DNA of 64,000 bases from Octopus sinensis (taxonomy: Eukaryota), in contig NC_042999.1 of assembly GCF_006345805.1 (NCBI RefSeq), forward strand, positions 85,126,001 through 85,190,000, in the 5' to 3' direction. The notes under the pieces were generated by a model. It made no database searches. It was not told the DNA's origin and was given only the letters and a program-made list of their open reading frames with translations. Positions 6,522 to 36,778 of this stretch are shown here, one piece after another (the stretch's first letter is position 1; each line of letters opens with the position of its first letter). The position numbers and the translations under genes are program-made.

Positions 6522-6569
<48 letters not shown>

Positions 6570-7450: not shown

Positions 7451-7737
7451 GCCTTCTCTTCCTGCATACACAAGCATATTTTGCACTCAGATACTTCAAA
7501 GAAGAGCCATTACCTGCGACGGTAATCCCAACAGAGTAGCCCGTCCTGAACGTGAAATCTGAACACACAAGCACACAATACACACACACAAGAAATATGC
7601 CACAACGATGATCTACCTCAGCACACAAGTTAAGAACACCACACCCAGAATAAAAACAAAATAATGCAAATTGAACAGACAATTTTCACAAGACAAATTC
7701 AAAGGAGACAAATATTCAAAAGATGGCTGTGTGTGTG

Positions 7738-7807
<70 letters not shown>

Positions 7808-8163: not shown

Positions 8164-8340
8164 TCGCAGGAGTGGCTGTGTGGTAAGTAGCTTGTCTACC
8201 AACCACATGGTTCTGGGTTCAGTCCCACTGCGTGGCCATTGGGCAAGTGTCTTCTACTATGCCTCGGGCGACCAAGCCTTGTGAGTGGATTTGGTAGACG
8301 GAAACTGAAAGAAGCCCGTCGTATATATGTATATAAAATT

Positions 8341-8388
<48 letters not shown>

Positions 8389-8605
8389 TGTGTGTGTTTG
8401 TGTGTCTGTGTTTGTCCCCCTAGCATTGCTTGACAACCGATGCTGGTGTGTTTCCGTCCCCGAAACTTAGCGGTTCGGCCAAAGATACCGATAGAATAAG
8501 TACTAAGATTACAAAGAATACGTCCTGGGGTCGAGTTGCTCGATTAAAGGCGGTGCTCCAGCATGGCCGCAGTCAAATGACTGAAACAAGTAAAAGAGTA
8601 AAGAG
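8164..8605 (+). mobile_element. tRNA-derived SINE family 1, full length, 5-bp TSD TATAG
   Basis: A-box-like TGGCTGTGTGGTAAG and B-box-like GGTTCAGTCCC, internal (TA)n, AAGAGT tail; TATAG at 8159-8163 and 8606-8610. Confidence 0.85.
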
Positions 8606-8642
8606 TATAGACATAACAATCTCCAAGTTTTAATAAATATAT

Positions 8643-8673
<31 letters not shown>

Positions 8674-8682
8674 ATTATTATT

Positions 8683-11600: not shown

Positions 11601-12957
11601 GTGGTGGTACTCCTGTTTGGATGGGTTTGAGTGAGTATCCAGCTTCTTTTGTGGCTGCAGTGGCTGCTGCGTATACTAAGTCATTTAGCTCAGTGATATC
11701 GCTTTTTGTTTCAGTGGCTATTAGTTCCGTGACGGCTAGGTTTATGCTGTTTATAATTGTTGTTGTTTCGTCTATTTTGCTTTTTGGGAGGTATGGTCGG
11801 TGGTCCATTTTGAGCACTGTGGTTTTCAGTTCTTCGATTATTTTACTTTTTATATTATCATAATCATTAGGCTCCCCTTCGTTGTTTCCAGGTTTTAGAT
11901 TTGTGTCGCTTTCTTTCTTATTTATATGTTTGTTTGCCGTGTTTTGGCTTGCTGTTTGTCGTGTATTATTATGCATCCTTACGGTTTGGGTTTGTTGCTT
12001 TTTGTTTACATCGTGTTTGTTGGGAATGTTACGTTTGTCTTCATGTTTTACTGTTTCAGTGTTTGTATTATTGGGCATTGTTGTGTGGCTTCTATCTACA
12101 TTTTCCTGGTGTATTTTTTCTTTTAGATGTTCTATTTCTATTTCTGATATTTTTTTGCGTTGAGAATGTATCTTCGTACGTTAGCTAGTTTATTAGGGTT
12201 CATTGCTGTATCCAAGTCTATATTTATGTTATTTTCCTTCCATATTTTATATGTATGTGTTGTGTTTTCATTTTTTGGGTAGAGCACTGCTGTGAAGTAT
12301 GCGTGTAGGATAGAAATGTATTCCTCACGTGTCCATTTATGTCTTTTGGGTTTTATTTGCGGGACATGAGGAACAACGTCCGGCCCATTATTTTGACGGT
12401 CGTCATTTTCGTAGGGTACCGGTCCGTTCAAATGAAATCTGTTGTCACATTATTTTGCACGTGTAGTTTTTCGTACATTTTGTGTTGTAAGTTTAAAGAA
12501 CGTACTTCCCGATTGTTATTCTTGGGTTGAATAATATCGGTGGTATTTAATTTCTTCGTAGTTTTTTTGTACATGGTGTTTGGGGTCGGGGATGATCTGG
12601 TGTTGATGGATCGTAATGTTTCACGAATGTTTACATGTGTTGTGTTAGAGGTGGAGATGATATCGAGTTAAAATACATCATTTCGTTTCGAAAATAGTAA
12701 TAAATTTCAATGAGTATTACTTACTCGGATATAGTCCAATCCTTTGTTAGTAAATTTTTGGCTCCATACGATGTCTTTGTTTTCGATGTTTGTGGATAGA
12801 TTTCGGAGCTCTGTTTTATCGTTCTTACATCTTAAACGTCCCCCGGTGTTCCTCTTAAACGTCCCCCGGTGTTCTCTTAAACGTCCCCCGGTGTTCTCTT
12901 AAACGTCTCCCGGTGTTCTCTTAAACGTTTCCCGGTGTTCTCTTAAACGTCTCCCGG

Positions 12958-12960
<3 letters not shown>
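8683..12960 (-). mobile_element. Near full-length R4/Dong-type non-LTR retrotransposon (RT + CCHC + restriction-like endonuclease), frameshifted
   Basis: ORF pieces 12138-12431 (KRHKWTREE), 11485-12078, 10104-11081 (NYRPITCLPTMYK, GIFQGDTLS, HLLYMDDLKLY), 9595-9969, 9047-9460 (CRICG..ETINHIISGC, RPDIVV), 8780-9046 (KIALLGTAHILRRTLS). Flanked on both sides by (TTA/TTG)n. Confidence 0.88.
12831..12960 (-). repeat. Six tandem ~22-bp repeats at the 5' end of the R4/Dong element
   Basis: Unit CTTAAACGTCCCCCGGTGTTCT repeated six times with minor variants, abutting the (TTA)n run. Confidence 0.9.
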
Positions 12961-13033
<73 letters not shown>

Positions 13034-13036: not shown

Positions 13037-15725
13037 TAGTCTTATTTTTATCACGTGCTTTCACTGCACTACCAGGCGCAGATCTGTGTGCCTTGAGTAT
13101 GTGCTGTGCTTTATTGTAATGCTTTTATTTTTACAGCATTGAAAGTGTTTTACGTAGGATGTGTGCGGTGCCTAGTAGTGCTATTTTCTGTATGTTATAT
13201 ATACTTGTTAGTCGTTTTATGTATTTGTCAGAATATTTTTTTATCATACCTAATGCGCCTACTTTGATAGGAATTGTTTCTGTTTTTAGACTCCACATTC
13301 GAGTTACCTCCATTTGCAGATCTTTTTATTTTGAATGTTTCTCCGTTTCTTTTGGAGAAACATTGACGGATATATTTCTTTTTCATTCGCAAAATATGCA
13401 TTTTTTTTAAAGACAATATAAAATCTGAAGATCGGCTATAATAATAAAGTTTTCCAGTCAAATTGCTATGAAGATATGATGTTGTGGGGATAAAATTGGA
13501 GGAAAAAGATACAGAGGTTTCAAAATCGAAAAAAACTGTATTTATAGCCAAAAGCGAGACATATATTTACTGCGTTTAGTGTAGCGGTGTCAACTATTCA
13601 AGCCAGCAGACTAAGGTGTCACATATTCATTGGTCCTGCTTCAACAACCCTGCGAAGAAAGCTTGCAGTTCCAAGCAATGCTGGTTTTAGTAGGTGTCCT
13701 ACCGTCACACCTGAACCAATCTTTTTCAGCTATGTTGGTATTTGAGTGCTGATACTTCCAAGTGCACCAATTACTATTGGTATCACGACTACTCTCTTTA
13801 TTGACCGCAACCTTCGTATTTCCCACTTTAAATCCTCATAGTTGTTTATTTTTTCTTCTTCTTTCACATTGATCCTGTTATCACCGGGTATGCTATGTTG
13901 ATTATCATACATGTCCTTTCTTTTTTATTCACCACAACAATGTCCGGTGTCGGGTGATCGCACTGGATCTTTGCATCCCACAAGATTTTACAATTATCAT
14001 ATTCGGTGACTCCTTCTAGACTTTACTCATAGCACGTCTTTGCTCTTTGTAGGCCGTGATTTCCACAGATCTTCCCATAGATCATTCTTGCTACATGTCA
14101 TGGCGTCTTTTGTATTCCTGTTGTGCCCAATTTTGGGCATCCACTAAACGATGTGGCATACCGTTTCACTTCTCACACCATCCATTCTGCTTTTGTCGCT
14201 ATCGGCAGTACTGTCGATTCTGCACTTCATATAGCTGGTCCTTAACGTTTATTCCTGAGCTGCACATATGAGTACTTCTGTCTCTAGCTTCAGGTTACTC
14301 ATCCTCATCCATAACCAACGGTCCACTGCAACTGTTTTGGCCCGCATATCTCTTACATTTTCTTTTCTTTCCATGCTTTTGTTTTCTTCATTTCTTGTTT
14401 AAATTTTTCTTTCGTTACACATTTTTTAGATTTGAGGACGCTGACCTTCTTCATGTGTTTCAACAGTGGTTCCACGGCACATTTTATATACTACACTAAT
14501 CTGTTTTCCTCTGCTTCAATACAGTCCCGGAAAATGATCAAACCTCTCCCACTCTTTCTTCTGGACAAGTACAGCCTATCGGTGCCACTCTTAAGGTAGA
14601 AGACTCCACATGCTGTCAACATTTTTCTTGTCTTAGTATCCATTTTCTTCACTTCTCTCTTTTGCCATTTTATAATTCCTACTCTATACCACCCCACACC
14701 AATAATAAAAATGATAGTAATAATAATAATTATTATTATTAATATTATTATTGTTGTTGTTGTTGTTGTTGTTGTTATCACTAAAGGCGGCGATCTGGGA
14801 GAATCGTTAGCACGTCGGGCGAAACGCTTAGTGGTATTTCGTCTACCTTCTGAGTTCAAACACTAGGGTCGATGTAATCGACTACATCCTACCTAAAATT
14901 TCTGGACTTGTGCCTATTGTAGAAAGGATTATTATTATTGTTGTTGTTGTTGTTGTTGTTATTATTATTATTATTATTTCGGTTTGGCACAGGTTTGGTC
15001 TTATTCTTGGTAGTATTTATGTGTATGACGGGTTACTATCTGTAACGTTAGATATTCACAAGTTTTCAGCAGTCTTTGAAGTGCTTAGAACACCCCTGAT
15101 AACCTTTGCTGTCCCAAAGAAGACAAACTTTCTGTTGGAGCACTACCAGGCGTACTATTTCAAACTCACAAAATCTTACATTTCTCCGATGCCAGTACTC
15201 TTTCCATTCAATGATTGCACCATGTGTTTCCAGTTTCAAATCCCCATTTCTGGCACAGTTTATAATGTAAAACATTTACAACTTGATCGTACTTCCATTT
15301 CTTATATTCTTCCGTTGCCAACTTAGGGCATTCTTCCACAATGTGTGCTACTATCTCGTTCCAAATTGCACAGGCTCTACGTTTTACCCAAGTTGTTTGT
15401 TTTTATTGCTTGATCTTGAGCTGCTACAGTTAGGCACTCTTTCTTTTTTTAATTGTTCTTTTTTAACCAAGCCTAATATTTTGTTCCACGTACATGGCCA
15501 TGCATAATTATCCACAAGTTTTCAGTAGTCTTTCAATTGCTTAGAACTCTTCTTATAACCCTTGCTGTCCCTAAGATGCAAACTTTCTATAGGAGCTCTA
15601 TCGAGCATTCTATTTTAACATCCTTCAGCCATTTGTCTATACCTTGACTTACTATTCCCAACGCACTAATTATTATACGCAGGACTTTTACTGTTCGCAT
15701 GCTCCAAATTCTTCTCATTTCAAAT
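13034..15725 (-). mobile_element. Stack of older R4/Dong-like 3' fragments separated by (TAA)n/(CAA)n runs
   Basis: Repeated C-terminal motifs (KIALLGTAHILRKTLS; VVVIPIVIGALG; IIISALGIVSQG) and an RT-thumb piece (KKMDTKTRKMLT...DRLYLSRRKSGRGL). Mirror copy about 57770-60140 (+). Confidence 0.75.
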
Positions 15726-15785
<60 letters not shown>

Positions 15786-15889
15786 TCATCATCATCATCA
15801 TCCTCATCGTCATTATTATTAATGAATGGCGACATAAACTATAAAGCTAAACATCTTATCAAGTAAGCTATCCAGAAACCTATCAAACG

Positions 15890-15956
<67 letters not shown>

Positions 15957-15982
15957 TGTAGTAGTAGTAGTAGTAGTAGTAA

Positions 15983-16035
<53 letters not shown>

Positions 16036-17464
16036 TATCGAATTTAACATTAGCAATTTGAAGTATATCGTTGATGACCACAAAAAGGCTAAGACATAGA
16101 TGTAGCGATAGAAATACTTTGATTGATTGACAGATAAGCAGACGGAGAGGAAGGTTTAAAATTACTTACGACTTGGCCCGTAGTCTGTCCAAAAAGAAAC
16201 AAAATTGATAATATTATATTCAAAACTGATTCATTAAAAGCCATAGATTAGAGCAAGAAGCAAAATACATATGTATGTGTATATATGTAGTGGGGAGCAA
16301 AATGAGTAACTTTTGATTCCTCATTTTCTCCTTACATGTTTGAAAATCATTACATTGCAAGTATAGCATTACTATTTTCTACTGCTGGATCATTTTTAGG
16401 AGTAAAAATGGGTCAGCACAGCTGTTGTTGTTGTTGAAGTTTAAAGCGTTCAGAACATAGTCAGATAGCAGGTCCCATTTTTCTTAAGAAAATTTTCCTT
16501 AATTTTGACCCGATTGGAATTGAGGTTGCTAATAAAATATCTGGATAGTTTTTGGCGCTTAATAATCCATATTCTTTTCCCTGTTGGATTCCAAGTCAAT
16601 TTTTTTCCACACTAATATCTAATTTAATCATTTTAAAGTTTCAACAGTGATGTCTAAGATGAGTAATTATCGGCTAATTTCAATAGTCGATAAGTACTGT
16701 ATGGTGTGTAAATACATCAGGAAGAAGACACTCCAGCATATCGTGATGAAGCTACAGCGAATATTTTATGTTGAGTTGGTTTTTTTTTTTAGTCGAGTTT
16801 CTTTAATTTCATATCACGTGCCATTTTCGCCTGATCTTTTTTTATTTAACTTTTTTCTTGCATTTCTGATCTTTCTTGTGTCTAGGGATAGCTAGGGATG
16901 TGTATGAGTCTCTTTTCTGGAGAATTTATCTTTACCTTATCATGGCTTACTCGTTTTGCCCCGGCCAAAGTTGTCTTTTATATACTCAAAGAGAATGGCG
17001 ATAATTTTCTAAAATAGTGATGAGATCGTATTATAATGCTTTTAATGCATTTAGTGAAGGCCATTTCCTTACCTAATATAGTTTTTGTAATGTAGTGAAC
17101 ATTTGTAGAAAATACATTTTGCCTCAAAGTCAAAAATGCAGAAAAGGCTCCTCGTTGAGCCCCATTACCACCACAACCTATATATATGAGAGAGAAAGAG
17201 AGAGAGGGAGGGAGAGAGAGAGAGCATATTGACGGTGTATTAAACTTTACTTACATGGATTTCCCGCTATGCCCAGACATAGAGTCGCAATTACTACAAA
17301 TAAAGAATATTATTTATTAGATTAAATTAAAATCGTAACGATTTTGTTTGGTTATTTAAAAAATTACAAGGATAATATATTGTAAGTGATTTAATTGATT
17401 CTGTTAAAGAACCGATATATGTTAGGTTAGAAAGAAAGTTCTGTCACAATTTTGACATAATCAG

Positions 17465-18600
17465 TTCGAGGGTACGTTTGCAATACTTACTGTTTAATAA
17501 GCTTTAATTTTTACATTCCAATGTTTTTCTTTTTCTTTTATTTTTGTTTGTTTGTCGATTGTACCATAGTGTTCTTTTTTTTCGTATCGTTTTTACCCCT
17601 TTTAAAATTACTTTAGATTAGATTTTGCACATGTTAGAAACTGCTTACGGTATAAATTCGAAAAAGGCTCTGCTGCAATGGAAGTCACTAGAAATATTTG
17701 TTGTCTGTAAAAATTAAGCTTTGTCCGGAAATGTCAATAATAGTTTCGTTAGTTTCGCTCGAGATTTTTTTTCTGTTGTTCTGTTTAAAAACCGTAGTTG
17801 AGGAAAATCCCAACCAAACTGCATGAGTGTTACCAAAACAATTCAATTCAAATCACTCTTAAATCATAAAATACCTTAATGGACTAAGTAAGAAAAGTAT
17901 CTAAACTTGGCTGCTGCGACCCTATCATCTGATTGCCGCTCAGCATAATCATAGAGTTTCCCTATGCTCGTCGTTAAAGAGTAGACTTGCTGCTGAATAT
18001 TTCCTGGTAGAATCATAACAAATGGTGATCATAGGTTTTTTATAACTATATTCAACAAAAATGACAATGGTTAGCACCCAAGGAGAAAGAAGAATCCATC
18101 TCCGAACCAAGAGTATTCCCGAAAATATTATGCTTTGTATTTAGTGGTAGATGAAGGGTGGTCATCTATCTTAAAGTGTTAAACCAAAACGAAACAGTTA
18201 ATGCAAAGTATTGTCGTAAACGAAAGCATTGCACAAAAATTTGCAGTAAAAGCACCCGTCATTGCTCAGTCGTAAGGGGTGTTGTTCTTACATCATAAAG
18301 CAAAACTACATGTTACCCACGTCACTCAGGGAAAGGTAATGGCACTAAATATTGAACTTTTGCCACATCCTCCTAACGCTCCTGACCATACTCCTTCTGA
18401 CAATCATCTTTTCAGATTATTGTAACATTATTTAGATGGAAAACTGTTTATAAATTGTGAAGAGGTTAAAGATGTTGTTGAGAGTTTCTTTGCTTAAAAA
18501 CTGAAGGATTTTCTGCTCGAGTGATCGACAGTTTGTAAATAGACGGAATTAGGTTATCAATAATGAGGGGAAATATTATGTTGAGTAGATATATTAATTA
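17465..18600 (+). mobile_element. Degenerate mariner-like transposon
   Basis: Decayed motifs including ELLPHPPNAPDHTPSDNHLF (HPPYSPDLAPSDYHLF-like). Mirror copy about 54910-56050 (-). Confidence 0.7.
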
Positions 18601-18719
18601 AGATCAAAGGAGTATTTCTTTCTTTCTTTCTCATCTTGAAATGTAACTGGACTTTTTCTAATAGTTTTTGATTCTCCTGGGAAGTTCAAATTTACTGTAG
18701 TGGAAATATAATTTAGAGA

Positions 18720-19900
18720 TAGAGAGAAGTGGAGGAGAAAAGATGAGACAAAGTCACTACTCAAGAAAGTATGAAAACGGTGATACGTACCAGCAACAGC
18801 TGCAATAAACGATAGATTCTTCATCTTGGCGAATTATGCTGCAAAGTCCGAAAACCAGACCTTTTATAACATGGAATACCAAATATAATCAATATGTATA
18901 TATCGAGCACAGATGGTGCATTAAATGTAATAAAACTGAAATACATGTGTGGGAACTATCAAACTATAAAGTGGGTGTATATGGTTACAGCCCAAATTTA
19001 TCGGTATTTATTGCATATTCGAAGGAAAAATGGAATTAACCCTTGAATTCACGTGTTGGAATATGTACTGATGGGGTACCATCTATGACAGGCTCTATTA
19101 AAGGTTTTGTATCTCTCGTAAAACAACAAAATTCTAATGTTATACGTAATCATTGCTTCCAACACAGGAAGGTACTAGCTTCAAAAACAATACCAGTTGA
19201 GTTAAAGCAAGTATTAAGCCAAACTGTTGAAATGCGCCAAAACATTTTGACTTATTGTAAGGTGCGCCGTGAGTAAAAAAAGTTGGGGAAACACTGCTTT
19301 AGTTTGTTAACATTTGTGATTAGAGAAGATTATTCCTATAATAATATTAGCAAACTCCATAAGGGAATGGAGAAGGAAATTCGTTTATTTGTCGTTTATT
19401 TGTCGTTTATTTGAATGAATTTGTGTTGATTTTGATTCTCTGCACAAGCGCTTACTTTTACACACAAAAGTCAGATGACTCTCAGAACTTCAGAAGGAAT
19501 TGCAAGCATTTTTAAAGAAGAAAAACACGAACGCTTCTTGGAATAACTCCACTGAGAATTTTAGTTTTCCAAGCTGGAATATTTAACAGAGATATTTGCA
19601 CAACTTTAGCATCAACACCAGTAGTCAAAGTAGAGATGAAAACATTATCACTTCATCAGATAAGCTGGTTTCATCTAGAAAGAAAGTTGTAATTTGGGAA
19701 AATAGAGCTGAAGGTGGTAACTAAGAAATGTTTCCCTTAATACGTAAAAGCTGCATAAAAGAAATGACTCCTATTGTATTTGAACAAATCTAGAAGAAAA
19801 AATTAACATCTATTTTCTGTCATTGAACACAGAAGAGTATGATTGGGTTCGAATTTATTTGAGTTGGGATTTTCAACCCCCAATAGCATCAGATCCTAAA
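18720..19900 (+). mobile_element. hAT (Buster/Charlie-like) transposase remnant
   Basis: ORF 19043-19276 GICTDGVPSMTGSIKGFV...NHCFQHRKVLASK matches the hAT CTDGAxxMxG and HCxxHR motifs. Confidence 0.75.
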
Positions 19901-21230: not shown

Positions 21231-21263
<33 letters not shown>

Positions 21264-21265
21264 TA

Positions 21266-21926
21266 AATAGTTATCGCCATACTAATATGGTACTCTATAA
21301 ATATAAGACTAAAGCTGTCGCTGATTAGCTCCAAGGGGCCATCGCCTCTAGCTAGCTATTTGACACACGAACCTGCGTCCATTACAAACCTTCGAACAGG
21401 GGAGGTCAGCCGCTTCACCTTGCTAGTCAGACATCTGCAGACATGTTTCAGGGTTGTTGCCCTTTATCAATGCAGCGTAGTCAGACCCGCAGGTGTCGCT
21501 ACTGACCGTCTGTTCGAAGATTTTATTTACCTAGTTACAGTGGAATACATCCACTTGTTTTCAATAATAGAAATATTAAAATTACTAAGTCTCTCTAAAG
21601 GAGATTACGACAGCGTTACTGGATATTAATAGTTATCGCCATACTAATATGGTAGTCTATAAATATAAGACTAAAGCTGTTGCTGATTAGCTCCAAGAGG
21701 CCATCGCCTCTAGCTAGCTATTTGAGACACGAACCTGCTTCCATTACAAACCTTCGAACAGTGGAGGTCAGCCGCTTCACCTTGCTAGTCAGACATCTGC
21801 AGACATGTTTCAGGGTTGTTGCCCTTTATCAATGCATTGATATTAGTATGGCGATAACTATTAATATCCAGTAACGCTGCCGTAATCTCCTTTAGAGAGA
21901 CTTAGTAATTTTGATATTTCTATTAT
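21266..21926 (-). repeat. Hammerhead-bearing tandem repeat, family A variant A' (~362-bp unit) with inverted terminal segment
   Basis: Hammerhead folds at 21435-21475 and 21797-21836 (-): CTGCA-TTGATAA-AGGG-CAACAA-CCCT-GAAAC-AT-GTC-TGCAG. 21840-21926 is an inverted copy of about 21567-21650. Confidence 0.85.
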
Positions 21927-21979
21927 ATATATATATGCATGTATTATATATATTATATATAAATATGTATGCATGTATG

Positions 21980-22018
<39 letters not shown>

Positions 22019-22457
22019 CACACACACATATATATATATATATATTATATATATATATATATATACACACACATATATATATATATATAAAGTTAATCCA
22101 AACATGAATGCACAAAGAGAAAACACAACAACGCGAGGACGTGGAACAAGTATAGTGTTATTGGACGCTCAGGAAAATATATATATATAAAATTAAATAA
22201 GGGTAGAAATTGATATTAATCAATTAAAACCAGTGGCTTAGCATATTTAAAAAAAAACGAAAATTAAAAATCGTTTTATTTCGTATATTTCATTTATCTT
22301 TCTTATTTTTACATTTTTTTTTGCTGAGATTTTTCTTGAGAACATATTCTTCATGGTAATGGCGATTTGGCGTCTACGTTTAGCATATAGGTTGTCCATT
22401 TTTAGTGGTCAGTCCTCTAAATTTTCGTATATATATATATATTATATATATATATAT

Positions 22458-23230
22458 AACAAAGTGGAGTTGTGGGGTACCGCACGAGTGGAATTATATA
22501 CGAAAGAAGGTTTGAAAATGCAATTTAAAAGATGTTTATTTACTTTACCGGTTACACTCTTTGGAAAAAAATTGTCAAAAGTAACATGTGGAAGTTTGGT
22601 TGCGTTAATTATTGGTTGTTGCAAATAGCTACATTACATATATACAGTCTTTGGTAACAGGGACATGTTAAGGACATAAAAAAGTTCAACAAGTTCCTTA
22701 AAATATTGGGCACAAAAGATTACATAAATAATCGTTCTCAAGGACATACTTAAGATAGTTTCCAAAAGGAATTGATATTGGTATTGTATCTGTATATTCA
22801 AACATGCACAGAATATTGGTTGACACAGAGTACTATAATTCATATAAATATACATTCTTTGGTGACAACAGTATGTTAGAGTATAAAAAAGTTTAACAAG
22901 CACAAAAGATTAAAACAAATATATTATACATCTCAAGGTAATTTCCAGGAGGAATTATTAAAAAAGTTCAGGTCAGTTTTAACTTCACCACCATCACAAT
23001 GTAAATCCTTTTGAACTCACAACATTCTGTATGTGCACACTGAACTTTTTGTAATGTAGCAATTTGCAACAACCAACAATTAACGCAACCAAACCTCCAC
23101 ATGTTACTCTTGGCAATCCTTCTTCAAAGAGTGAAACCAATAAAGCAATTAAACATCTTTCAAATTGCACCCTCAAACCTTCCCTCGCATACAATTCCAC
23201 TCGTACGGCACCCCACAACTCCACCCTGCC
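22458..23230. repeat. Unclassified interspersed repeat with 176-bp inverted termini; a third copy at about 35499-35955
   Basis: 22458-22633 aligns gap-free to the reverse complement of 23055-23230; 22500-22950 matches the reverse complement of 35499-35955. Confidence 0.85.
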
Positions 23231-23275
23231 ACACACACACACATATATATATATATATTATATATATATATATAT

Positions 23276-23394
<119 letters not shown>

Positions 23395-23404
23395 ATATAT
23401 ATAT

Positions 23405-23512
<108 letters not shown>

Positions 23513-23587
23513 ATATATATATATATATTGATGTATATTGGTTTTGTCTCTAATTTAATATAATATAATATTGATATATATATATAT

Positions 23588-23628
<41 letters not shown>

Positions 23629-23751
23629 ACACACACATATATATATATTATATATATATATATTATATATATATATATAGATATATGTATACATATATAT
23701 GTATATATATTGACATATATATATATATATATTGATATATACCGATATATG

Positions 23752-23782
<31 letters not shown>

Positions 23783-23869
23783 TGATATATATATGTATAT
23801 AGATATATGTATACATATATATGTATATATATTGACATATATATATATATTGATATATACAGATATATG

Positions 23870-23900
<31 letters not shown>

Positions 23901-23915
23901 TATATATATATGTAT

Positions 23916-24827
23916 ATAATAGAAATATTAAAATAACTAAGTCTCACTAAAAGAGAACAGCGGCAGCGTTCCCAGAAAATAATAGTTATCGCCATACTAA
24001 TATGGCATTCTTATAAAAATAAGAAAAAAAGCCTCATGGAGCTAATAAGCGGACAGCTTTTTTCTTATTTTTATAAGAATGCCATATTAGTATGGCGATA
24101 ACTATTATTTTCCGGGAACGCTGCCGCTGTTCTCTTTTAGTGAGACTTAGTTATTTTAATATTTCTATTATTGAAAACAAGTGGATGTATTCCACCGAAA
24201 CTAGGTAAATAAAACCATCGAGCAGAGATTGTCGGAAGCGACACCTACTGCTGGCTACGCTGCATTGAAAAGGGGCAATACCCCGAAACGCGTCTGTAGC
24301 TGCCGGTCAAGTAGTGTGGAGCGACTGACCTCCCTTGTTCGAAGGTTATATGGATACAGTTTGTGTATCAAATAGCTAACTTAAGGCGATGGCCTCATGG
24401 AGCTAATAAGCGGACAGCTTTTTTCTTATTTTTATAAGAATGCCATATTAGTATGGCGAAACTATTATTTTCCGGGAACGCTGGCGCGGTTCTCTTTTAG
24501 TGAGACTTATTATTTTAATATTTCTATATATTGAAAACAAGTGGATGTATTCCACCGAAACTAGGTAAAATAACCATCGAACAGAGATTGTCGGAACGAC
24601 ACCTACTGGCTGGCTACGCTGCATTGAAAAGGGGCAATACCCCGAAACGCGTCTGTAGCTGCCGGTCAAGTAGTGTGGAGCGACTGACCTCCCTTGTTCG
24701 AAGGTTATATGGATACAGTTTGTGTCCAATAGCTAACTTAAGGCGATGGCCTCATGGAGCTAATAAGCGGACAGCTTTTTTCTTATTTTTATAAGAATGC
24801 CATATTAGTATGGCGATAACTATTATT
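23916..24827 (+). repeat. Family A hammerhead tandem array (~359-bp unit) with a ~116-bp inverted 5' segment
   Basis: Two hammerheads at 24259-24300 and 24618-24659; 23916-24032 is the reverse complement of 24056-24171. Confidence 0.9.
24259..24300 (+). ncRNA. Minimal type I hammerhead ribozyme, U3-A8 core variant
   Basis: GCTGCA-TTGAAAA-GGGG-CAATA-CCCC-GAAAC-GC-GTC-TGTAGC; predicted cleavage after C24294. Identical copies at 24618-24659 (+), 27843-27884 (-), 28033-28074 (+); a damaged copy at 28395-28434. Confidence 0.85.
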
Positions 24828-24897: not shown

Positions 24898-25616
24898 TAC
24901 GTCACGATGTATATACCGCTACTGTATATAACTCACTTTGATATTTATCATTGTTTGATTTCACTTTTTCAATATCAGCGACAGTGGACGCTGGAAAAAG
25001 TATAAGTATTTGTGAAGGAAATCTAATTCTCGGCGACAACTATGATTGTCACACGCTGACGAGAGGTCAATACCTCGAAACTCGAGTCCGTGTGTATCAT
25101 AAGTTGAAGACGGGAAGGATGACTTCCCTTTGCAAATACTGACAGGACACAGATAGTGTGTCTATGGCCAGCTGGAGGAGTGTGTCCTCCTGGGGCTAAA
25201 AACTACAGTAGCATCCACCCTTAGGGGTTAGCCATATTGAAATGGCAAAAATACGTCACGATGTGTTACCGCTGCTGTATATAACTCACTTTGATATTTA
25301 TCATGTTTGTTTGATTTCACTTTTTCAATATCAGCGACAGTGGACGCTGGAAAAAGTATAAGTATTTGTGAAGGAAATCTAATTCTCGGCGACAACTATG
25401 ATTGTCACACGCTGACGAGAGGTCAATACCTCGAAACTCGAGTCCGTGTGTATCATAAGTTGAAGACGGGAAGGATGACTTCCCTTTGCAAATACTGACA
25501 GGACACAGATAGTGTGTCTATGGCCAGCTGGAGGAGGAGTGTGTCCTCCGGGCTAAAAACTACAGTAGCATCCACCCTTAGGGGTTAGCCATATTGAAAT
25601 GGCAAAAATACGCCAC
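24898..25616 (+). repeat. Family B hammerhead tandem repeat (356-bp unit, two copies)
   Basis: Near-identical units with hammerheads at 25050-25094 and 25406-25450, embedded in (TA)n. Confidence 0.9.
25050..25094 (+). ncRNA. Canonical minimal type I hammerhead ribozyme
   Basis: CACACG-CTGACGA-GAGGT-CAAT-ACCTC-GAAACT-CG-AGTC-CGTGTG; GUC cleavage triplet ends at 25088. Further copies at 25406-25450, 33252-33296 (-), 33604-33648 (-), 33960-34004 (-), 34300-34344, 34653-34697. Confidence 0.92.
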
Positions 25617-25729
25617 TATATATATATAATATATATATAATATATATAATATATATATATATATACACAATATATATATATCATAGTTATATGTATATAG
25701 ATATATGTATATATATTGACATATGTATT

Positions 25730-27192
25730 AAAGTGTTTGAAAGAGTGTTAAGATCAAGGATAGCTGACTTCCTGGAGACCTAGAAACTCCTAAATTCAAA
25801 TCAGCATGGCTTTCACTGTGGCAGGGACTGTCTAACACAGCTCTTACACCACATTGAAGATGTACTCAAAGTCTTGGGAACAGGTTCGAACTCTTACGTC
25901 ATATATCTTGACTTCAGTAAAGCGTTCGACAGGGTAGACCATAACATCCTACTCTCAAAATTGGCAAATGTTGGAATCCGTGGAAAACTTCTACACTGGA
26001 TTAAATATTTCCTGGCGAATAGAACACAACATGTTGTAGTTGATGGAGTCCACTCAAACCCAGCAAAAGGCACCAGCGGTGTTCCCCAGGGAACTGTTTT
26101 GGGTCCGCTACTCTTCATAATTTACGTAAACGACCTTTCCAGTGTCGTACATTACTGCAAAGTGAAAATATTCGCTGATGACACTAAGCTCCAGCAAATC
26201 GTCAATGAAGAAGCAGACCGAACTCAACTCCAGTCTGATCTATATGCTGTGAGTCAATGGGCAGACAGAAACAAAATGCAACTGAATGAGGGAAAATTTG
26301 AGCTGATGCATTTTGGAAGAAATTCCTCACTAAAACAACCATACTCTCTTCCTTCAGGGGAACCGCTCACAGCCTCTAACAATATCAGAGACCTGGGTGT
26401 AATTGTTGATGACGATCTCAGTTGGAGTGCACACATCAACAAGAAGGTCGATATAGCCCGTAGGATGAGTTCCTGGATCTTAAGAACTTTCCGGTCTAGA
26501 GAACAAGGTGTCATCATACCACTTTTTCCCTCCTTTGTACGGCCACACCTTGAATACTGCTGCCCACTGTGGTCTCCTCACACAAGACAAAACATCTCCA
26601 GAATTGAGTCACCCCAGAGGGCTCTCACTAAACAAATTGAAGGCATGGCTGCTCTCGATTATTGGGATCGCCTTAAAGCCTTAAAACTTTACTCCCTCCA
26701 GCGTCGCCGTGAGCGGTACATCATTTGTACGATGTGGAAAATATACCGCCAACTTTGCCCAAACGACCTAAACATTAGCTTCAAGGTTCATCCAAGGCTT
26801 GGACCAAGGGCTATACGTCCCCTGCCAAATTCAAGATCACAACATACATGTACACTGCAACATAATTTCTTTTCCTCAACAGGCCCTGCCCTATTTAACA
26901 TTGTCCCGAGGGAGATCAAAGAGGAAAAGGATCCCATCAACTTTAAACAGAGTCTGGATAGATTCCTTCAAAGAATACCAGATAAGCCACCCATAATTGG
27001 ATACAACTCACCCAACAAGAACTCACTACTTGAACAAAACTGGATACAACTCACCCAACAAGAACTCACTACTTGAACAAAACTTGACTTAAACAGGATT
27101 CGAATAATCCTATCAGGTGGTGCTATTAAGTTAGACATGGCCTGGACCAATCTTTGGTCGAAACATATCTAAGTTTATCTAAGTCTAAGTTT
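25730..27192 (+). mobile_element. 5'-truncated CR1/L2-like LINE (RT ORF 25874-27076)
   Basis: YLDFSKAFDRVDH, SGVPQGTVLGPLLF, IFADDTK, RPHLEYC, LYSLQRRRERY; 3' tail of CTAAGT-like repeats. Confidence 0.92.
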
Positions 27193-27214
27193 ATATAGAT
27201 ATATGTATATAGAT

Positions 27215-28602
27215 ATTAATTGTTATCGCCATATTAATATGGCATTCTTATAGATATAAGAATAATCGCTGCCATGGTCAGCACCATGTATCAATATTAA
27301 TTGTTATCGCCATATTAATATGGCGATAACAATTAATTTCCAGTAAACGCTGCCGTAATGTCTTTTATAGAGACTTAGTAATTTTAAGATTTCTATTATT
27401 GAAAACAAGTGGATGTATTCCACTGAAACTAGGTAAATATAAGCCTTCGAACAGCGACGTCAATGGCGACACCTGCGGGTCTGACTGCGCTACATTGACA
27501 AGGGGCAATACCCCGAAACACGTCTGTAGCTGTCGGACTGGCAGTGTGAAGCGGCTGACCTCCCATGTTCGAAGGTTATAATGGATACAGATCGTGTATC
27601 AATAGCTATCTTGATGGCGGTGGCCTCATGGAGCTGACCATGGCAGCGATTATTCTTATATCTATAAGAATGCCATATTAATATGGCGATAACGATTAAT
27701 TTCCAGTAAACACTGCCGTAATGTCTTTTATAGAGACTTAGTAATTTTAATATTTCTATTATTGTATATAGATATATGTATATATATTTCCATATAACCT
27801 TCGAACAAGGGAGGTCAGTCGCTCCACACTACTTGACCGGCAGCTACAGACGCGTTTCGGGGTATTGCCCCTTTTCAATGCAGCGTAGCCAGCCAGTAGG
27901 TGTCGCTTCCGACAATCTCTGTTCGATGGTTTTATTTACCTAGTTGAAAACAAGTGGATGTATTCCACCGAAACTAGGTAAATAAAACCATCGAACAGAG
28001 ATTGTCGGAAGCGACACCCACTGGCTGGCTACGCTGCATTGAAAAGGGGCAATACCCCGAAACGCGTCTGTAGCTGCCGGTCAAGTAGTGTGGAGCGACT
28101 GACCTCCCTTGTTCGAAGGTTATATGGATACAGTTTGTGTATCAAATAGCTAACTTAAGGCGATGGCCTCATGGAGCTCATAAGCGGACAGCTTTTTTCT
28201 TATTTTTATAAGAATGCCATATTAGTATGGCGATAACTATTATTTTCCGGGAACGCTGCCGCTGTTCTCTTTTAGAGAGACTTAGTTATTTTAATATTTC
28301 TATTATTGAAAACAAGTGGATGTATTCCACCGAAACTAGGTAATAAAACCATCGAACAGAGATTGTCGGAAGCGACACCTACTGGCTGGCCTACGCTGCA
28401 TTGAAAAGGGGCAATACCCGAAAGCGTCTGTAGCTGCCGGTCAAGTAGTGTGGAGCGACTGACCTCCCTTGTTCGAAGGTTATATGGATACAGTTTGTGT
28501 ATCAATAGCTAACTTAAGGCGATGGCCTCATGGAGCTAATAAGCGGACAGCTTTTTTCTTATTTTTATAGAATGCCATATTAGTATGGCGATAACTATTA
28601 TT
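27215..28602. repeat. Family A hammerhead arrays: variant A2 (27215-27772) and family A (27789-28602) with an internal strand flip
   Basis: A2 hammerhead 27489-27530: GCTACA-TTGACAA-GGGG-CAATA-CCCC-GAAAC-AC-GTC-TGTAGC. The family A copy is on (-) at 27843-27884, then on (+) at 28033 and 28395. Confidence 0.88.
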
Positions 28603-28934: not shown

Positions 28935-30640
28935 ACTTTGATACTTTGATAGGTTTCGGCCATTATTGGCCCAGGCCATGTCTAACTTAATAGCACCACC
29001 TGGTGAAGTCTTTCAAGTCAGAATTTGGGCACTATGGCCCACTCAAGTAGAGAGTTATTGTTTACAGAGACATATCCGGGTGTAGGGGGTTTATCCGGGA
29101 TTTCTTGAAGGAATCTGTCCAAAGACCTCTTGAACCCTATAGGGTCAGTTTCTGTTTTAATGTGTTTTGGTGTAATGTCAAAGAGAGCGGTGCCAATTGA
29201 GGTGAAATAATTGTGCCGTATTGTTGTTATGAGATGAGAGTGCGATTTTTGTTTTGGGCGGATGGCGCGGGGCCCAAGCCTTGGATATACCTTAAAGGTG
29301 ATGCCAACATCATTTGGGCAATGCTGATGGAATATTTTCCACATCATGCAGATGATGTAGCGCTCACGACGACGTTGGAGAGAATAAAGTTTTAGCTTTT
29401 CTAGTCGACCCCAATAGTCGAGGCCTGTCATGCCATCTATCTTTCTTGTGATTGCCCTTTGAGGTGCTTCAACTTTTATGATACTTTGTATTGTGTGGGA
29501 AGACCACAATGGACAACAGTATTCAAGGTGGGGTCGGGCAAAAGTGGAGAAGAGAAGGATAATGGTGTGGATATCTCTCGACTGGAAAGTTCTGAGAATC
29601 CAGGAACACATTCTGCGGGCCATGTCAACTTTGGTGTTTATATGAGTGGCCCAGCTTATGTTGTTGTCCACAATTACTCCCAAGTCTCTGATGTTGTTGG
29701 ACGCCGCGAGAGTTTCACCTGAAGGAAGGGAGTATGGGAGTTTCAGGGCATCCTCTTTTCCAAAGTGGATTAACTCAAATTTATCCTCGTTCAGCAGCAT
29801 ATTGTTTTTTTCTGCCCATTGGATAACAGCCAGTAGATCTGACTGAAGGCATGTCCGGTCACTCGCCTCATTTATGATCTTCTGTAGCTTGGAATCATCT
29901 GCAAAGATTTTTATGTTGCTGTGCTTGATGATGTCATTAATGTCATTAATGTAGATGATGAAAAGAAGTGGGCCCAGCACAGTGCCTTGCGGAACGCCAC
30001 TACTGACTTTGGCTGGGTTAATCTTATTACCCCTTCAACTACAACATGTTGAGATCTGTCTGTCAGGAAAACTTGATCCATTTCAGTAACTTTCCAGAGA
30101 CACCAATGTTGGATAGTTTTTTCAATAGGATCTTGTGATCGACCCTGTCGAAGGCCTTACTGAAATCAATAAAGAAGACATCGGTGTTGCGGCCCTCTCC
30201 CAAAGCTCTCAAAATGTCATCAAAGTGATGCAGGAGCTGCGTTAGGCAGTCCCTTCCATTACGGAACCCATGTTGGTTAGAGATCAGCCGTCTGTTGCTT
30301 TCAGAAATTGGGTTATTCGAGATCTCACCACCCTCTCAAATACCTTGATGATATGAGAGGTGAGTGAGATCGGATGGTAGTTCACTGCAAGGGACTTGTT
30401 TCCTTTTTGAAAACTGGGACAACAGACTGGGGCAGAAGGTTTTTGGAATATAGCCAGCATCCAGTGAGTTTCTCCACAGATTAGCAAGAGGAGATGCAAG
30501 TTGGTGTCGACACACCTTCAGGACACAGCAGGGAACCTATTGGGGCCTACTGCTGAATTGTGTTTTATTTCGTTTATCGCCGCTAAGACCAGGGGCACTA
30601 AACGTTATGTCCGATATAGTGTGCTGGGGGTTGACATCAC
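28935..30640 (-). mobile_element. 5'-truncated CR1/L2-like LINE, paralogous to 25730-27192
   Basis: ORF 29018-29980 (LGPLLFIIYIND, IFADDSK, RPHLEYC), upstream NYHPISLTSHIIKVFE; the same 3' UTR and an ATCAAAGT repeat tail. Confidence 0.9.
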
Positions 30641-31009: not shown

Positions 31010-31010
<1 letters not shown>

Positions 31011-31171
31011 CTGCGTGGCAAGTAGCTTCCTAACCAACCACATGGTTCCGGTTCAGTCCCACTGCGTGGCATCTTGGGCAAGTGTCTTCTACTATAGCCT
31101 CGGGCCGACCAAAGCCTTGTGAGTGGATTTGGTAGACGGAAACTGAAAGAAGCCCGTCGTATATATGTATA

Positions 31172-31223
<52 letters not shown>

Positions 31224-31245
31224 ATGTGCGTTTGTGTGTCTGTGT
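31010..31245 (+). mobile_element. SINE family 1 fragment (others at about 32960-33045 -, 35173-35495 +, 36160-36510 -, 41925-42380 +, 45630-45895 -)
   Basis: Shared GGTTCAGTCCCACTGCGTGGCA...GAGTGGATTTGGTAGACGGAAACTGAAAGAAGCCCGTCG core. Confidence 0.8.
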
Positions 31246-31544
31246 TACGCACAGGGTTCGATCTAATCGACTTAATCACTTTGTCTGTCCTTGTTTGTCC
31301 CCTCTATGTTCAGCCCCTTGTGGGCAATAAAGAATTAAGAAACGTTAGCACGCCGAGTGAAATGCTTAGCAGTATTTCGTCTGCCGCTACGTTCTGAGTT
31401 CAAATTTCGCCGAGGTCGACTTTGCCTTTCATCCTTTCAGAGTCGATAAATTAAGCACCAATTATACACTGGGGTCGATGTAATCGACTTAATCCCTTTG
31501 TCAGTCCTTATTTGTCCCCTCTGTGTGTAGCACCTTGTGGGCAG

Positions 31545-35134: not shown

Positions 35135-35174
<40 letters not shown>

Positions 35175-35324
35175 CTGCGTGGCAAGTAGCTTCCTAACCA
35201 ACCACATGTTTCCGGTTCAGTCCCACTGCGTGGCATCTTGGTAAGTGTCTTCTACTATAGCCTCGGGCCGACCAAAGCCTTGTGAGTGGATTTGGTAGAA
35301 GGAAACTGAAAGAAGCCCGTCGTA

Positions 35325-35402
<78 letters not shown>

Positions 35403-35952
35403 GTGTGTGTGCGTTTGTGTGTCTGTGTTTGTTCCCCTAGCATTGCTTGACAACCGATGCTGGTGTGTTTATGGCCCCGTTACTTAGCGCTTCGGCAATT
35501 ACCTTGAGATGTATAATATATTTGTTTTAATCTTTTGTGCCCATTATTTCAATGAGCTTGTTAAACTTTTTATACTCTCAACATCTGTTGTCACCAAAGA
35601 ATGTATATTTATATGGATTATAGTACTCTGTGTCAACCAATATTCTGTGCATGTTTGAATATACAGATACAATACCAATATCAATTCCTTTTGGAAACTA
35701 TCTAAGTATGTCTTTGAGAACGATTATTATGTAATCTTTTGTGCCCAATATTTTAAGGAACTTGTTGAACTTTTTTATGTCATTACATGTCCCTGTTACC
35801 AAAGACTGTATATATGTAATAGCATTTGCAACAACCAATAATTACGCAAGCAACCAACTTCCACATGTTACTTTTGACAATTTTTTTCCAAAGAGTTGAA
35901 ACCGGTAAAGTAAAATAAAAATCTTTTAAATTGCATTTTCAAACCTTCTTTC

Positions 35953-35986
<34 letters not shown>

Positions 35987-36778
35987 ATATATATATATAT
36001 ATATATATATATCTATATATATATTATATATATATTATATTTTTCCATTCGAGGTAATTTTATATATATATATATATATATGTATATATAAATTACCTCG
36101 AATGGAAATTTTCTAACGGATAATTTTCTTACATATATATCCTTTAACCTTTATTTATTCAGAGGCGCCGCCTTGAAAAATCTTAGTCGAACTAATCGAC
36201 TCCAGTACTTATTTTTTTGTAAAGGCTGATACTTATTCTATCAGTTCCTTTTGCCGAAGCGTTAAGTTACGGGCATGTGAACACACCAACAGCGGTTGTC
36301 AAGTGGTGGTGGTGGTGGTAAGGGCCTAACACACACACATACACACAAACACATACACACAATTCTGTCTACCGAATCCACTCACAAGGCTTTGGTCAGC
36401 CCGAGTCTATAATGGAATACACTTGCCCACGGTACCACACACTGGGTCTGAACCCGGAACCACTTAGCAGGGAGGCAAACTTCTTACTATACGGCCACGC
36501 CCGTATGTATACAATATTACATGCACTTATATATTAAATGACTATTGACATAAAATTCGATTTCAGTGTATGCCTGTGCAGCTTGCCCCGAACACCTGTT
36601 TAGTTTTATTACATGTTTGTTTGTTTGCATGTATGTATGTATGTATGTGTGTGTATGCATGTGTATGTGCATATAAACACAATTACGCACACTCACACGC
36701 ACATATACCGTACGCAACTACCCACGAGTGTATCTGTGCGTTTGTGTGTGTGTGTGTGTGTGTATGTATGAGAGAGAA

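What the first reader, a model, noticed from the sequence alone, without database searches (positions are those of the whole stretch)
23055..23243. Genomic repeat copy bearing an ADAR-type A-to-G hyperediting footprint
The reverse complement of 23055-23230 aligns without gaps to 22458-22633 with 28 mismatches. Twenty are A-to-G, against one G-to-A, one T-to-C, three C-to-T and three transversions. All 20 changed A's have a 5' A or T; A's preceded by G stay unchanged (GAAA to GAGG, GGAAG to GGAGG). Established: ADAR disfavours a 5' G and hyperedits long duplexes, and coleoid cephalopods edit extensively. The third copy (about 35820-35955) has the A state over the part it covers. The flank that is (TA)n beside copy 1 is (TG)n beside the edited copy (23231-23243 on -), as expected if the microsatellite was edited too. 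Inference: an inosine-rich RNA was reverse transcribed and integrated, fixing RNA edits in the genome; the two copies themselves form a duplex-forming inverted repeat.
Basis: partly seen in the sequence, partly recalled or inferred. Interest (0 to 1): 0.85.

Follow-up and report, generated by a model that had tools for sequence, protein, structure and literature searches.

The report
Repeat copy with ADAR-like A-to-G burst
One arm of a 181-bp inverted repeat differs from the other by 20 one-directional A-to-G changes in the sequence context an RNA-editing enzyme (ADAR) prefers; this may be editing fixed in DNA, but the direction and route of the change are unproven.

Summary
Among 99 repeat pairs in the window, this is the only pair outside microsatellites in which one transition type dominates (P about 2e-12 against the window's spectrum).

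Three things favour A>G change in copy 2:
- Copy 3 has A at all 15 sites it covers.
- Copy 2 is a compositional outlier at 34% G.
- The context fits ADAR and no cytidine deaminase.

No family consensus could be obtained, because the genome is absent from every searchable collection. Polarity is therefore not proven.

The (TG)n flank is not independent evidence. Compound (CA)n(TA)n arrays and microsatellite motif switches are common in this window.

The architecture complicates the "edited RNA was retro-copied" story. Copy 2 sits head-to-head against copy 1, with the (TA)n ends facing outward. A LINE whose orientation is fixed by its reading frame also ends in a TA array. If (TA)n is the 3' tail, the changed adenines lie on the antisense (first-strand cDNA) strand, not on the element's sense RNA.

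Best reading (about 0.5): ADAR-type deamination fixed through a reverse-transcription-linked intermediate. Main rival (about 0.2): reverse polarity or a subfamily difference.

The parts
22428..22457 (.). (TA)n array on the outer side of copy 1
   Evidence: Read directly in the sequence and listed among the TA arrays.
22458..22638 (+). Copy 1 arm, which carries the A state. It is the first 181 bp of the repeat unit.
   Evidence: Ungapped alignment to rc(copy 2); nhmmer E=2e-59.
22639..23049 (+). Rest of the copy 1 unit, which forms the 411-nt loop between the arms. It holds two diverged subrepeats (about 22634-22845 and 22842-22960). It is shared with copy 3 as far as 22946.
   Evidence: blastn 22495-22946 against 35959-35494, 92% identity; subrepeat alignment.
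23050..23230 (-). Copy 2, the arm carrying 20 A>G changes when read on the minus strand (T>C on the plus strand).
   Evidence: G fraction is 34%, in the top 0.5% of 176-bp windows.
23231..23243 (.). (CA)n on the plus strand, (TG)n on the minus strand, lying between copy 2 and the TA array.
   Evidence: Sequence. The same kind of compound array occurs at 21990-22068, 23590-23682, 8388-8400 and 35403-35420.
23244..23918 (.). Long (TA)n-rich array on the outer side of copy 2.
   Evidence: TRF reports 23243-23918, period 2, 343 copies.
35494..35959 (-). Copy 3, which carries the A state. It covers unit positions about 38-503 and differs from copy 1 mostly by 1-bp indels.
35954..36090 (.). (TA)n array at the same end of copy 3 as in copies 1 and 2.
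   Evidence: TRF and sequence.
35403..35493 (-). Last 90 nt or so of a different retroposon-like family that ends in (CA)n(TA)n. It is joined directly to the inner end of copy 3.
   Evidence: Alignment with the copies at 8387 and 42123.

Best explanation
**What copy 2 is.** Copy 2 (23050-23230) is a short copy of the (TA)n-adjacent end of a low-copy repeat family. It is joined head-to-head to a longer copy (copy 1 unit, 22458 to about 23049) inside a TA microsatellite.

**What happened to it.** On the window's minus strand it took a single burst of adenine-to-guanine changes. About half of all A's that follow A or T changed, and none that follow G or C. This is the footprint of promiscuous ADAR-type adenosine deamination of a long duplex.

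**How it reached DNA.** The deaminated bases (inosine, read as G) became DNA because the duplex was linked to reverse transcription or RNA-templated synthesis. Three routes remain open:
- (a) An edited transcript in the copy-1 orientation served as template, for example after template switching.
- (b) ADAR deaminated dA in the first-strand cDNA of an RNA:cDNA hybrid while copy 2 was being made. This fits the tail orientation, at about 0.15.
- (c) After insertion, one arm was converted through an R-loop or transcript-templated repair from the locus's own edited hairpin RNA, at about 0.1.

**Shown and inferred.**
- Shown: the cluster, its strand, its context, its density and the architecture.
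- Inferred: the polarity, the enzyme and the route.
For: - The cluster, its strand asymmetry and its 5' context are established.
- It is unique among 99 repeat pairs in the window.
- A large inverted duplication in the same window (8.3 kb at 98.6-98.8%) shows no such bias.
- Copy 3 has A at 15 of 15 covered sites.
- Copy 2 is G-rich beyond 99.5% of windows, whereas copy 1 is ordinary.
- There are no indels between the arms, and only 8 other substitutions. This fits a burst on top of low divergence.
- The context matches the invertebrate and octopus hyper-editing motif, with G depleted upstream (PMC5625713).
- Editing of 33% of all A's agrees with the roughly 50% ceiling known for promiscuous ADAR editing of long perfect dsRNA (my own knowledge, not checked here).
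- ADARs deaminate dA in DNA/RNA hybrids with the same neighbour preferences (PMC5389660).
- The window is full of LINE RT genes that could supply reverse transcriptase.
- The arms form a duplex: -354 kcal/mol on the minus-strand RNA and -291.5 on the plus-strand RNA.
Against: - Polarity is not proven. A context-free permutation rejects both directions about equally (2.5e-4 forward, 5e-4 reverse).
- Copy 2's branch is also the longest for non-A>G changes.
- If (TA)n is the 3' tail, the changed A's are not on the sense RNA. The simplest version, an edited retroposon RNA that was then copied, therefore fails.
- Editing of a hairpin should hit both arms. Here the split is 20 against at most 3.
- Copy 2 lying 411 bp from copy 1 would be an unlikely accident for a dispersed retrocopy.
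- No target-site duplication can be seen, because both ends lie in TA arrays.
- This is a single locus. There are no DNA reads and no RNA data.
- The organism is only loosely identified.
Confidence: 0.5

Rival explanations
1. Reverse polarity. Copy 2 keeps the ancestral G-rich state (C-rich on the tail-reading strand). Copies 1 and 3 descend from a master that suffered about 20 G>A changes (C>T on the tail-reading strand), either by a cytidine deaminase or as a subfamily shift.
For: - Three copies give only one unrooted tree.
- Copy 2's branch also carries 5-6 other changes, against 1 for copy 1 and 1 for copy 3, so the root may lie on that branch.
- Copies 1 and 3 share all 15 states, as expected if those states are encoded in a master copy.
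- AG dinucleotides are depleted in copy 1 (rho 0.64).
- The C-rich, CA-rich end of copy 2 resembles the 3' ends of other retroposon-like repeats here.
Against: - No cytidine-deaminase context fits. On the C strand the changed fractions are TC 4/13, CC 9/19, AC 3/19, GC 4/9 and CpG 0/4. The pattern is neither APOBEC-like nor CpG decay.
- RIP prefers CpA. Here C followed by A changed at 7/25, less often than C followed by T at 7/12. RIP is also fungal.
- Under the tail orientation the change would be C>T on the sense strand. That is not the G>A expected from deamination of first-strand cDNA.
- It needs an ancestor with 34% G, a value seen in only 0.5% of windows.
- The clean rule that A's following G or C never change would be a coincidence.
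Confidence: 0.22
2. Polymerase error. Copy 2 was synthesised by a low-fidelity polymerase or a reverse transcriptase under a skewed nucleotide pool. It inserted G opposite T or U (a wobble mispair) after an A or T, in the manner of the WA-motif errors of polymerase eta or of hypermutagenesis under biased dNTP pools.
For: - The changes lie on what would be the newly made first strand if (TA)n is the tail.
- The 5' A/T context is also the known WA hotspot of polymerase eta (my own knowledge, not checked here).
Against: - The density, 47% of WA sites and 33% of all A's, is far above any known single-pass polymerase error rate, which is a few percent at most for T:dGTP by polymerase eta (my own knowledge).
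- Copy 1 has at most one private change in the 139 bp where copy 3 polarises it; if it was made in the same event, that argues against a pool or enzyme effect.
Confidence: 0.08
3. Selection for an RNA hairpin. The inverted repeat encodes a structured minus-strand RNA, for example a precursor of small RNAs. Only substitutions that keep pairing as G-U wobbles were tolerated.
For: - 23 of 25 transitions are wobble-compatible on the minus-strand RNA (two-sided p=2e-5).
- That RNA folds to an almost uninterrupted 180-bp stem of -354 kcal/mol, against -291.5 for the plus strand.
Against: - Selection predicts wobble changes on both arms. The observed split is 20 against 3, where about 57:43 is expected (p=0.0025).
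- It does not explain the 5' neighbour rule.
- It does not explain why a young repeat, about 4.5% diverged otherwise, carries so many changes.
Confidence: 0.04
4. Assembly or sequencing artefact. The G calls in copy 2 are consensus or polishing errors, or come from RNA-derived reads, in a repeat-rich and poorly polished region.
For: - The window has an N gap at 3040-3139.
- Copy 3 differs from copy 1 mostly by 1-bp indels (13 gaps against 7 substitutions in 475 bp), which looks like residual long-read error.
Against: - Copies 1 and 2 align with no indel over 181 bp.
- Systematic base-calling errors would hit both arms, because they hold the same sequence on opposite strands.
- Twenty errors of a single type that all obey a neighbour rule are not a known error mode.
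Confidence: 0.06

Closest known systems
A-to-G hypermutated proviruses (avian leukosis virus / RAV-1 and other retroviruses), attributed to ADAR editing of viral RNA before reverse transcription. This rests on my own knowledge of Felder 1994 and Hajjar & Linial 1995, which I did not read here.
   Same: Dense, strand-specific A>G clusters fixed in DNA because an edited RNA passed through reverse transcription.
   Different: - Those cases are exogenous retroviruses, with the edits on the viral sense strand.
- Here the sequence is a non-coding germline repeat copy in an invertebrate.
- The edits appear to lie on the antisense strand if (TA)n is the tail.
APOBEC3 G-to-A 'DNA editing' footprints in endogenous retroelements (discussed for mouse IAP and human HERV-K in PMC2873906).
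   Same: A copy-against-copy comparison shows a one-type, strand-coordinated mismatch cluster that was fixed when a hypermutated retroelement integrated.
   Different: - The deaminase class, base and context all differ.
- No TC or CC preference is seen here.
RNA-level hyper-editing of inverted repeats, which is exceptionally abundant in Octopus (PMC5625713).
   Same: - A long, nearly perfect inverted repeat within 2 kb.
- G depleted upstream of edited A's.
- About half of the susceptible A's are hit.
   Different: - Hyper-editing changes RNA only. Here the G's are in the genome sequence.
- Only one arm is affected.
ADAR deamination of dA in DNA/RNA hybrids (PMC5389660).
   Same: It would put A>G on the DNA strand paired with RNA, with the same neighbour preferences (TAG and AAG high, GAA and GAC low).
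   Different: It has been shown in vitro only. No germline footprint of it is known.

Membership tests
ADAR-type hyper-editing footprint | A cluster of A>G changes on one strand with few other changes | tested here: met
   20 of 28 mismatches are A>G, against T>C 1 and G>A 1. P=1.7e-12 against the window's spectrum.
ADAR-type hyper-editing footprint | G depleted at the 5' neighbour | tested here: met
   Changed fractions by 5' neighbour: G 0/9, C 0/8, T 7/15, A 13/28 (p=4.6e-4). The reference motif is from PMC5625713.
ADAR-type hyper-editing footprint | The substrate lies in a long duplex | tested here: inconclusive
   The present locus folds into a 180-bp stem. The duplex state of the molecule that was actually deaminated cannot be known.
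ADAR-type hyper-editing footprint | A is the ancestral state | tested here: inconclusive
   Copy 3 has A at 15 of 15 sites, and composition favours A. No consensus could be obtained.
ADAR-type hyper-editing footprint | The G alleles are present in genomic DNA reads, and editing of the family is seen in RNA | not testable with these tools
   No read data are available.
Retrocopy made by target-primed reverse transcription | A constant 3' end with a tail and a variable 5' truncation | tested here: met
   All three copies keep the same end at a (TA)n array. The other ends lie at unit positions 181, about 503 and up to 592. A LINE whose orientation is fixed by its reading frame ends in a TA array.
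Retrocopy made by target-primed reverse transcription | Target-site duplication | tested here: inconclusive
   Both flanks are TA arrays, so no duplication can be recognised.
   On the strand that reads into the (TA)n array the changes are T>C (20), with A>G only 1. This holds only if (TA)n is the tail, which is likely but not proven.
APOBEC/AID-type hypermutation (reverse polarity) | A TC, CC or WRC context at the deaminated C | tested here: not met
   Changed fractions: TC 4/13, CC 9/19, AC 3/19, GC 4/9. None is significant.
RIP-like repeat-induced point mutation | A preference for CpA to TpA, affecting both duplicated copies | tested here: not met
   C followed by A changed at 7/25, less than C followed by T at 7/12. 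Only one arm differs. The window has animal-type transposons.
Transposon with terminal inverted repeats, MITE or foldback element | Other copies carry both terminal inverted repeats | tested here: not met
   Copy 3 has one arm only. nhmmer finds no second arm anywhere in the window.
Hairpin RNA locus under structural selection | Pair-preserving changes on both arms | tested here: not met
   23 of 25 transitions are wobble-compatible, but the split between arms is 20 against 3 (p=0.0025).

The most novel reading that the evidence does not exclude
**Proposal.** The adenines that changed were in DNA, not RNA. An ADAR deaminated dA in the first-strand cDNA while it was still paired with its RNA template during target-primed reverse transcription. 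Alternatively, one arm was rewritten from the locus's own hyper-edited hairpin transcript by RNA-templated repair.

**Why it would be new.** Either route would be the first germline footprint of ADAR-driven DNA mutation. It would be a direct route from RNA-editing machinery to heritable sequence change in an animal lineage known for heavy editing.
Probability: 0.12. Interest if true: 0.9.

Novelty: new variant of a known kind. Interest (0 to 1): 0.55.

Why it matters
If the polarity holds, this is a germline DNA record of adenosine-deaminase hypermutation in an invertebrate that is probably a cephalopod. In that case editing enzymes would alter the genome's repeats as well as transcripts.

It also makes a question testable. 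Screening all repeat copies against their consensus for strand-coordinated A>G clusters, and asking whether they fall on the sense or the antisense strand relative to the 3' tail, would separate editing of RNA from editing of RNA:DNA hybrids.

If the polarity is reversed, the locus instead marks an unexplained C>T burst at the origin of a repeat subfamily.

Tried and rejected
**1. Retrieving more family copies to polarise the changes**
- A protein-database search with the open frame shared by copies 1 and 2 gave no hits.
- Exact-pattern scans of metagenome contigs, prokaryotic genome contigs and viral contigs gave only chance 15-20-mers, which I checked by blastn.
- nhmmer found only the three copies in the window.

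**2. Finding the source genome**
- The best hits to a LINE RT open reading frame were 53-70% identical. The best named hit was Argonauta hians at 59%.
- A 934-bp contig from GCA_024449705.1 could not be identified.
- A mariner open reading frame led to ENA contigs that share only the mariner with the window.

**3. The (TG)n flank as evidence of editing.** Rejected. (CA)n(TA)n arrays are common here. An (ATT)n/(GTT)n switch produces a spurious '8 of 10 A>G' pair.

**4. A larger palindrome (21840-22089 against 23746-24003) with its own asymmetry.** Rejected. It is (CA)n aligned to (TA)n.

**5. A known RNA or tRNA-derived element.** Rfam and ARAGORN found nothing.

**6. GC-biased gene conversion, CpG decay and transcription-coupled asymmetry.** Rejected on strand asymmetry, context and density.

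**7. Using the dinucleotide context to set polarity.** The permutations are symmetric, so this does not decide it.

Full report
**Observation**

The reverse complement of 23055-23230 aligns without gaps to 22458-22633. It has 28 mismatches: 20 A>G, 3 C>T, 2 A>T, 1 T>A, 1 G>A and 1 T>C. The homology in fact spans 181 bp per arm (22458-22638 and 23050-23230).

Twenty of the 60 A's in copy 1 are G in copy 2:

| 5' neighbour | Changed / total |
|---|---|
| T | 7/15 |
| A | 13/28 |
| C | 0/8 |
| G | 0/9 |

- Fisher test, A/T against G/C: p=4.6e-4.
- A>G against G>A: p=1e-4.
- A>G against T>C: p=4.5e-6.

I compared this with every other repeat pair in the window (all-against-all blastn, 99 pairs with at least 10 substitutions).
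- The four transition types are balanced overall (467-518 each).
- A>G makes up 12.9% of substitutions, so 20 or more of 28 has P=1.7e-12.
- Only two other pairs were comparably one-sided, and both are microsatellite motif switches. One is (ATT)n against (GTT)n at 12960-13033 / 60139-60214. The other is (CA)n against (TA)n at 21990-22060 / 23750-23900.
- A large inverted duplication in the same window (4464-7781 / 64000-60673 and 13720-18721 / 59795-54790, 98.6-98.8% identical) shows no bias.

**Anatomy**

Only three copies of the family exist in the window (nhmmer).

- **Copy 1** is the start of a longer unit. 22495-22946 matches copy 3 (35959-35494, minus strand) at 92%. The unit contains two diverged subrepeats of about 200 bp. 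It runs on past 22946 to about 22960, because subrepeat B stays homologous to subrepeat A there. No comparator covers 22961-23049, so its continuation to the junction with copy 2 is inferred.
- **Copy 2** covers only unit positions 1-181. It sits in inverted orientation right after the copy 1 unit, so the arms are separated by 411 nt.
- **Copy 3** breaks at 35494. There it is joined to the last 90 nt or so of a different, more abundant retroposon-like family that ends in (CA)n(TA)n.

All three copies have the same end next to a (TA)n array: 22428-22457 for copy 1, 23231-23918 for copy 2 and 35954-36090 for copy 3. Their other ends differ, at unit positions 181, about 503 and up to 592.

A LINE whose orientation is fixed by its RT open reading frame (25874-27076 plus strand, 29018-29980 minus strand) ends in a short (TATCWAAG)n motif followed by a TA array. 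Several other repeats also read into TA arrays.

The simplest reading is that (TA)n is the 3' tail of LINE-mobilised elements here. The three copies would then be 5'-truncated retro-copies, and copies 1 and 2 would be two such copies joined head-to-head with their tails outward inside a TA array. That arrangement could arise if both ends of a break in a (TA)n target primed on (UA)n-tailed RNAs, which is inference. No target-site duplication can be recognised in TA arrays.

An 11-nt inverted motif (22961-22971 against 23040-23050) abuts the inner edge of copy 2. I cannot explain it.

**Polarity**

- Copy 3 has A at all 15 of the A>G sites it covers.
- With three sequences there is only one unrooted tree. 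Copy 2's branch is also the longest for other changes (5-6, against 1 for copy 1 and 1 plus indels for copy 3). The 20 changes could therefore be G>A in an ancestor of copies 1 and 3.
- Context-free permutations reject both directions about equally (2.5e-4 and 5e-4), so the neighbour rule alone does not set the direction.

Three arguments favour A>G in copy 2.
1. The rule is first-order and exact in the A-state context, and it matches the best-known ADAR preference (G depleted upstream, also in octopus; PMC5625713). In the reverse direction no cytidine-deaminase context fits: TC 4/13, CC 9/19, AC 3/19, GC 4/9 and CpG 0/4.
2. Copy 2 is a compositional outlier at 34% G, a value reached by 0.5% of 176-bp windows. 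Copy 1 at 23% is ordinary.
3. The arms have no indels and only 8 other differences, as expected for a burst on a young pair.

I put A>G in copy 2 at roughly 0.7-0.75.

All attempts to get a family consensus failed, because the source genome is not in any collection I can search.

**The flank**

The 13-nt (TG)n on the minus strand beside copy 2 is real. Compound (CA)n(TA)n arrays are frequent here, however, and microsatellite motif switches mimic editing elsewhere in the window. It is compatible with editing of a (UA)n or (TA)n tail but adds no independent support.

**Mechanism**

The density is 33% of all A's and 47% of the susceptible ones. Together with the neighbour rule, this points to ADAR-type deamination of a long duplex rather than to any polymerase error or mutational drift.

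Three routes remain open for how the change reached DNA.

- **Route (a): an edited RNA was reverse-transcribed and integrated.** It requires the template to be a transcript in the copy-1 orientation. If (TA)n is the 3' tail, that is the antisense of the element. It could still have been captured by RT template switching, giving a chimera of the form 5'-RNA2-RNA1-3'. That is inference.
- **Route (b): ADAR deaminated dA in the first-strand cDNA while it was paired with its RNA template.** ADARs do this in vitro on long matched hybrids, with the same neighbour preferences (PMC5389660). This route puts the changes on exactly the strand where they are observed. It also explains why one cDNA (copy 2) is hit and the other (copy 1) is not.
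- **Route (c): one arm was rewritten after insertion.** The perfect hairpin would be hyper-edited as RNA, and one arm would then be rewritten through an R-loop or transcript-templated repair.

On the minus-strand RNA the 20 A>G and 3 C>T differences become G-U wobbles. That RNA still forms an almost uninterrupted stem (-354 kcal/mol, against -291.5 for the plus strand).

**Rivals**

- **Structural selection on the hairpin** would explain 23 of 25 wobble-compatible transitions (p=2e-5). It does not explain the 20:3 split between arms (p=0.0025) or the neighbour rule.
- **Polymerase or RT misincorporation** of G opposite T or U after a W base fits the strand and the context. The density is not credible, however, and copy 1 has at most one private change in the 139 bp where copy 3 polarises it.
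- **Artefact.** Copy 3 against copy 1 shows an excess of indels typical of residual long-read error. Copies 1 and 2 have no indels, and errors would affect both arms alike.

**Comparison with what is known**

The closest precedents are these:
- A-to-G hypermutated proviruses attributed to ADAR (my own knowledge).
- APOBEC G-to-A footprints in endogenous retroelements (PMC2873906).
- RNA-level hyper-editing of inverted repeats, which is extreme in octopus (PMC5625713).

This case works like the first of these. It differs in being a non-coding germline repeat of an invertebrate, in affecting one arm of a local inverted pair, and in probably lying on the antisense strand.

**Organism**

The window is a transposon-rich, 63% A+T animal sequence. 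It carries LINE RTs, a Penelope-like element and mariner fragments. The best named relative of one RT is from the octopod Argonauta hians, at 59%. A cephalopod origin is plausible but not shown.

**Verdict**

This is a strong single-locus signal whose polarity and route need the whole genome and read data.

Noticed in passing
window 4464-7781 / 64000-60673 and 13720-18721 / 59795-54790: A large inverted segmental duplication at 98.6-98.8% identity. The arms are interrupted by insertions, including a LINE-like block around 8900-12400 in the left arm. Its substitution spectrum is balanced.
   Followed up: partly
window 12960-13033 vs 60139-60214 (and 8640-8700): A microsatellite motif switch between (ATT)n and (GTT)n in paralogous copies. 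It yields a spurious '8 of 10 A>G' pair, and a third paralogue also has (GTT)n(ATT)n. This is a caution for any editing screen that does not mask microsatellites.
   Followed up: yes
window 35494-35959 vs 22495-22946: Copy 3 differs from copy 1 by 13 gaps, mostly 1-bp and in homopolymers, but by only 7 substitutions. This looks like residual long-read consensus error in one of the two regions.
   Followed up: partly
window 22961-22971 and 23040-23050: An 11-nt inverted motif, AAAAAGTTCAG / CTGAACTTTTT, lies exactly at the inner edge of copy 2. The same motif recurs in the unit's subrepeats at 22679 and 22886. It may mark how the inverted junction formed.
   Followed up: partly
window 8175-8560, 31010-31480, 35174-35493, 42000-42380: An abundant composite SINE-like family with an internal (CA)n(TA)n array and a 170-bp unit flanked by TA arrays. 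The unit has a motif reminiscent of a tRNA B box, but ARAGORN finds no tRNA.
   Followed up: partly
window 25874-27210 (+) and 29980-28939 (-): Two copies of a LINE share a 3' UTR that ends in (TATCWAAG)2-3 followed by a TA array. The plus-strand copy also has a perfect 43-bp tandem duplication at 26998-27084.
   Followed up: partly
window 3361-4789 (+): Overlapping open reading frames carry an RT-like region and a GIY-YIG-like motif (YIGQT...), which suggests a Penelope-like element. This was read by eye only and was not scanned against profile libraries.
   Followed up: no
window 24031-24827, 24925-25640, 27211-28600, 33091-34247, 21261-21836: Tandem repeats of about 352-359 bp occur in several blocks and in both orientations around the locus.
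   Followed up: no
window 51971-52525; L130-L132: A mariner fragment is 91-93% identical at the DNA level to contigs of ENA assemblies ERZ25073763 and ERZ25073769. Those contigs share none of the window's other repeats. This could reflect a shared or horizontally spread mariner.
   Followed up: partly
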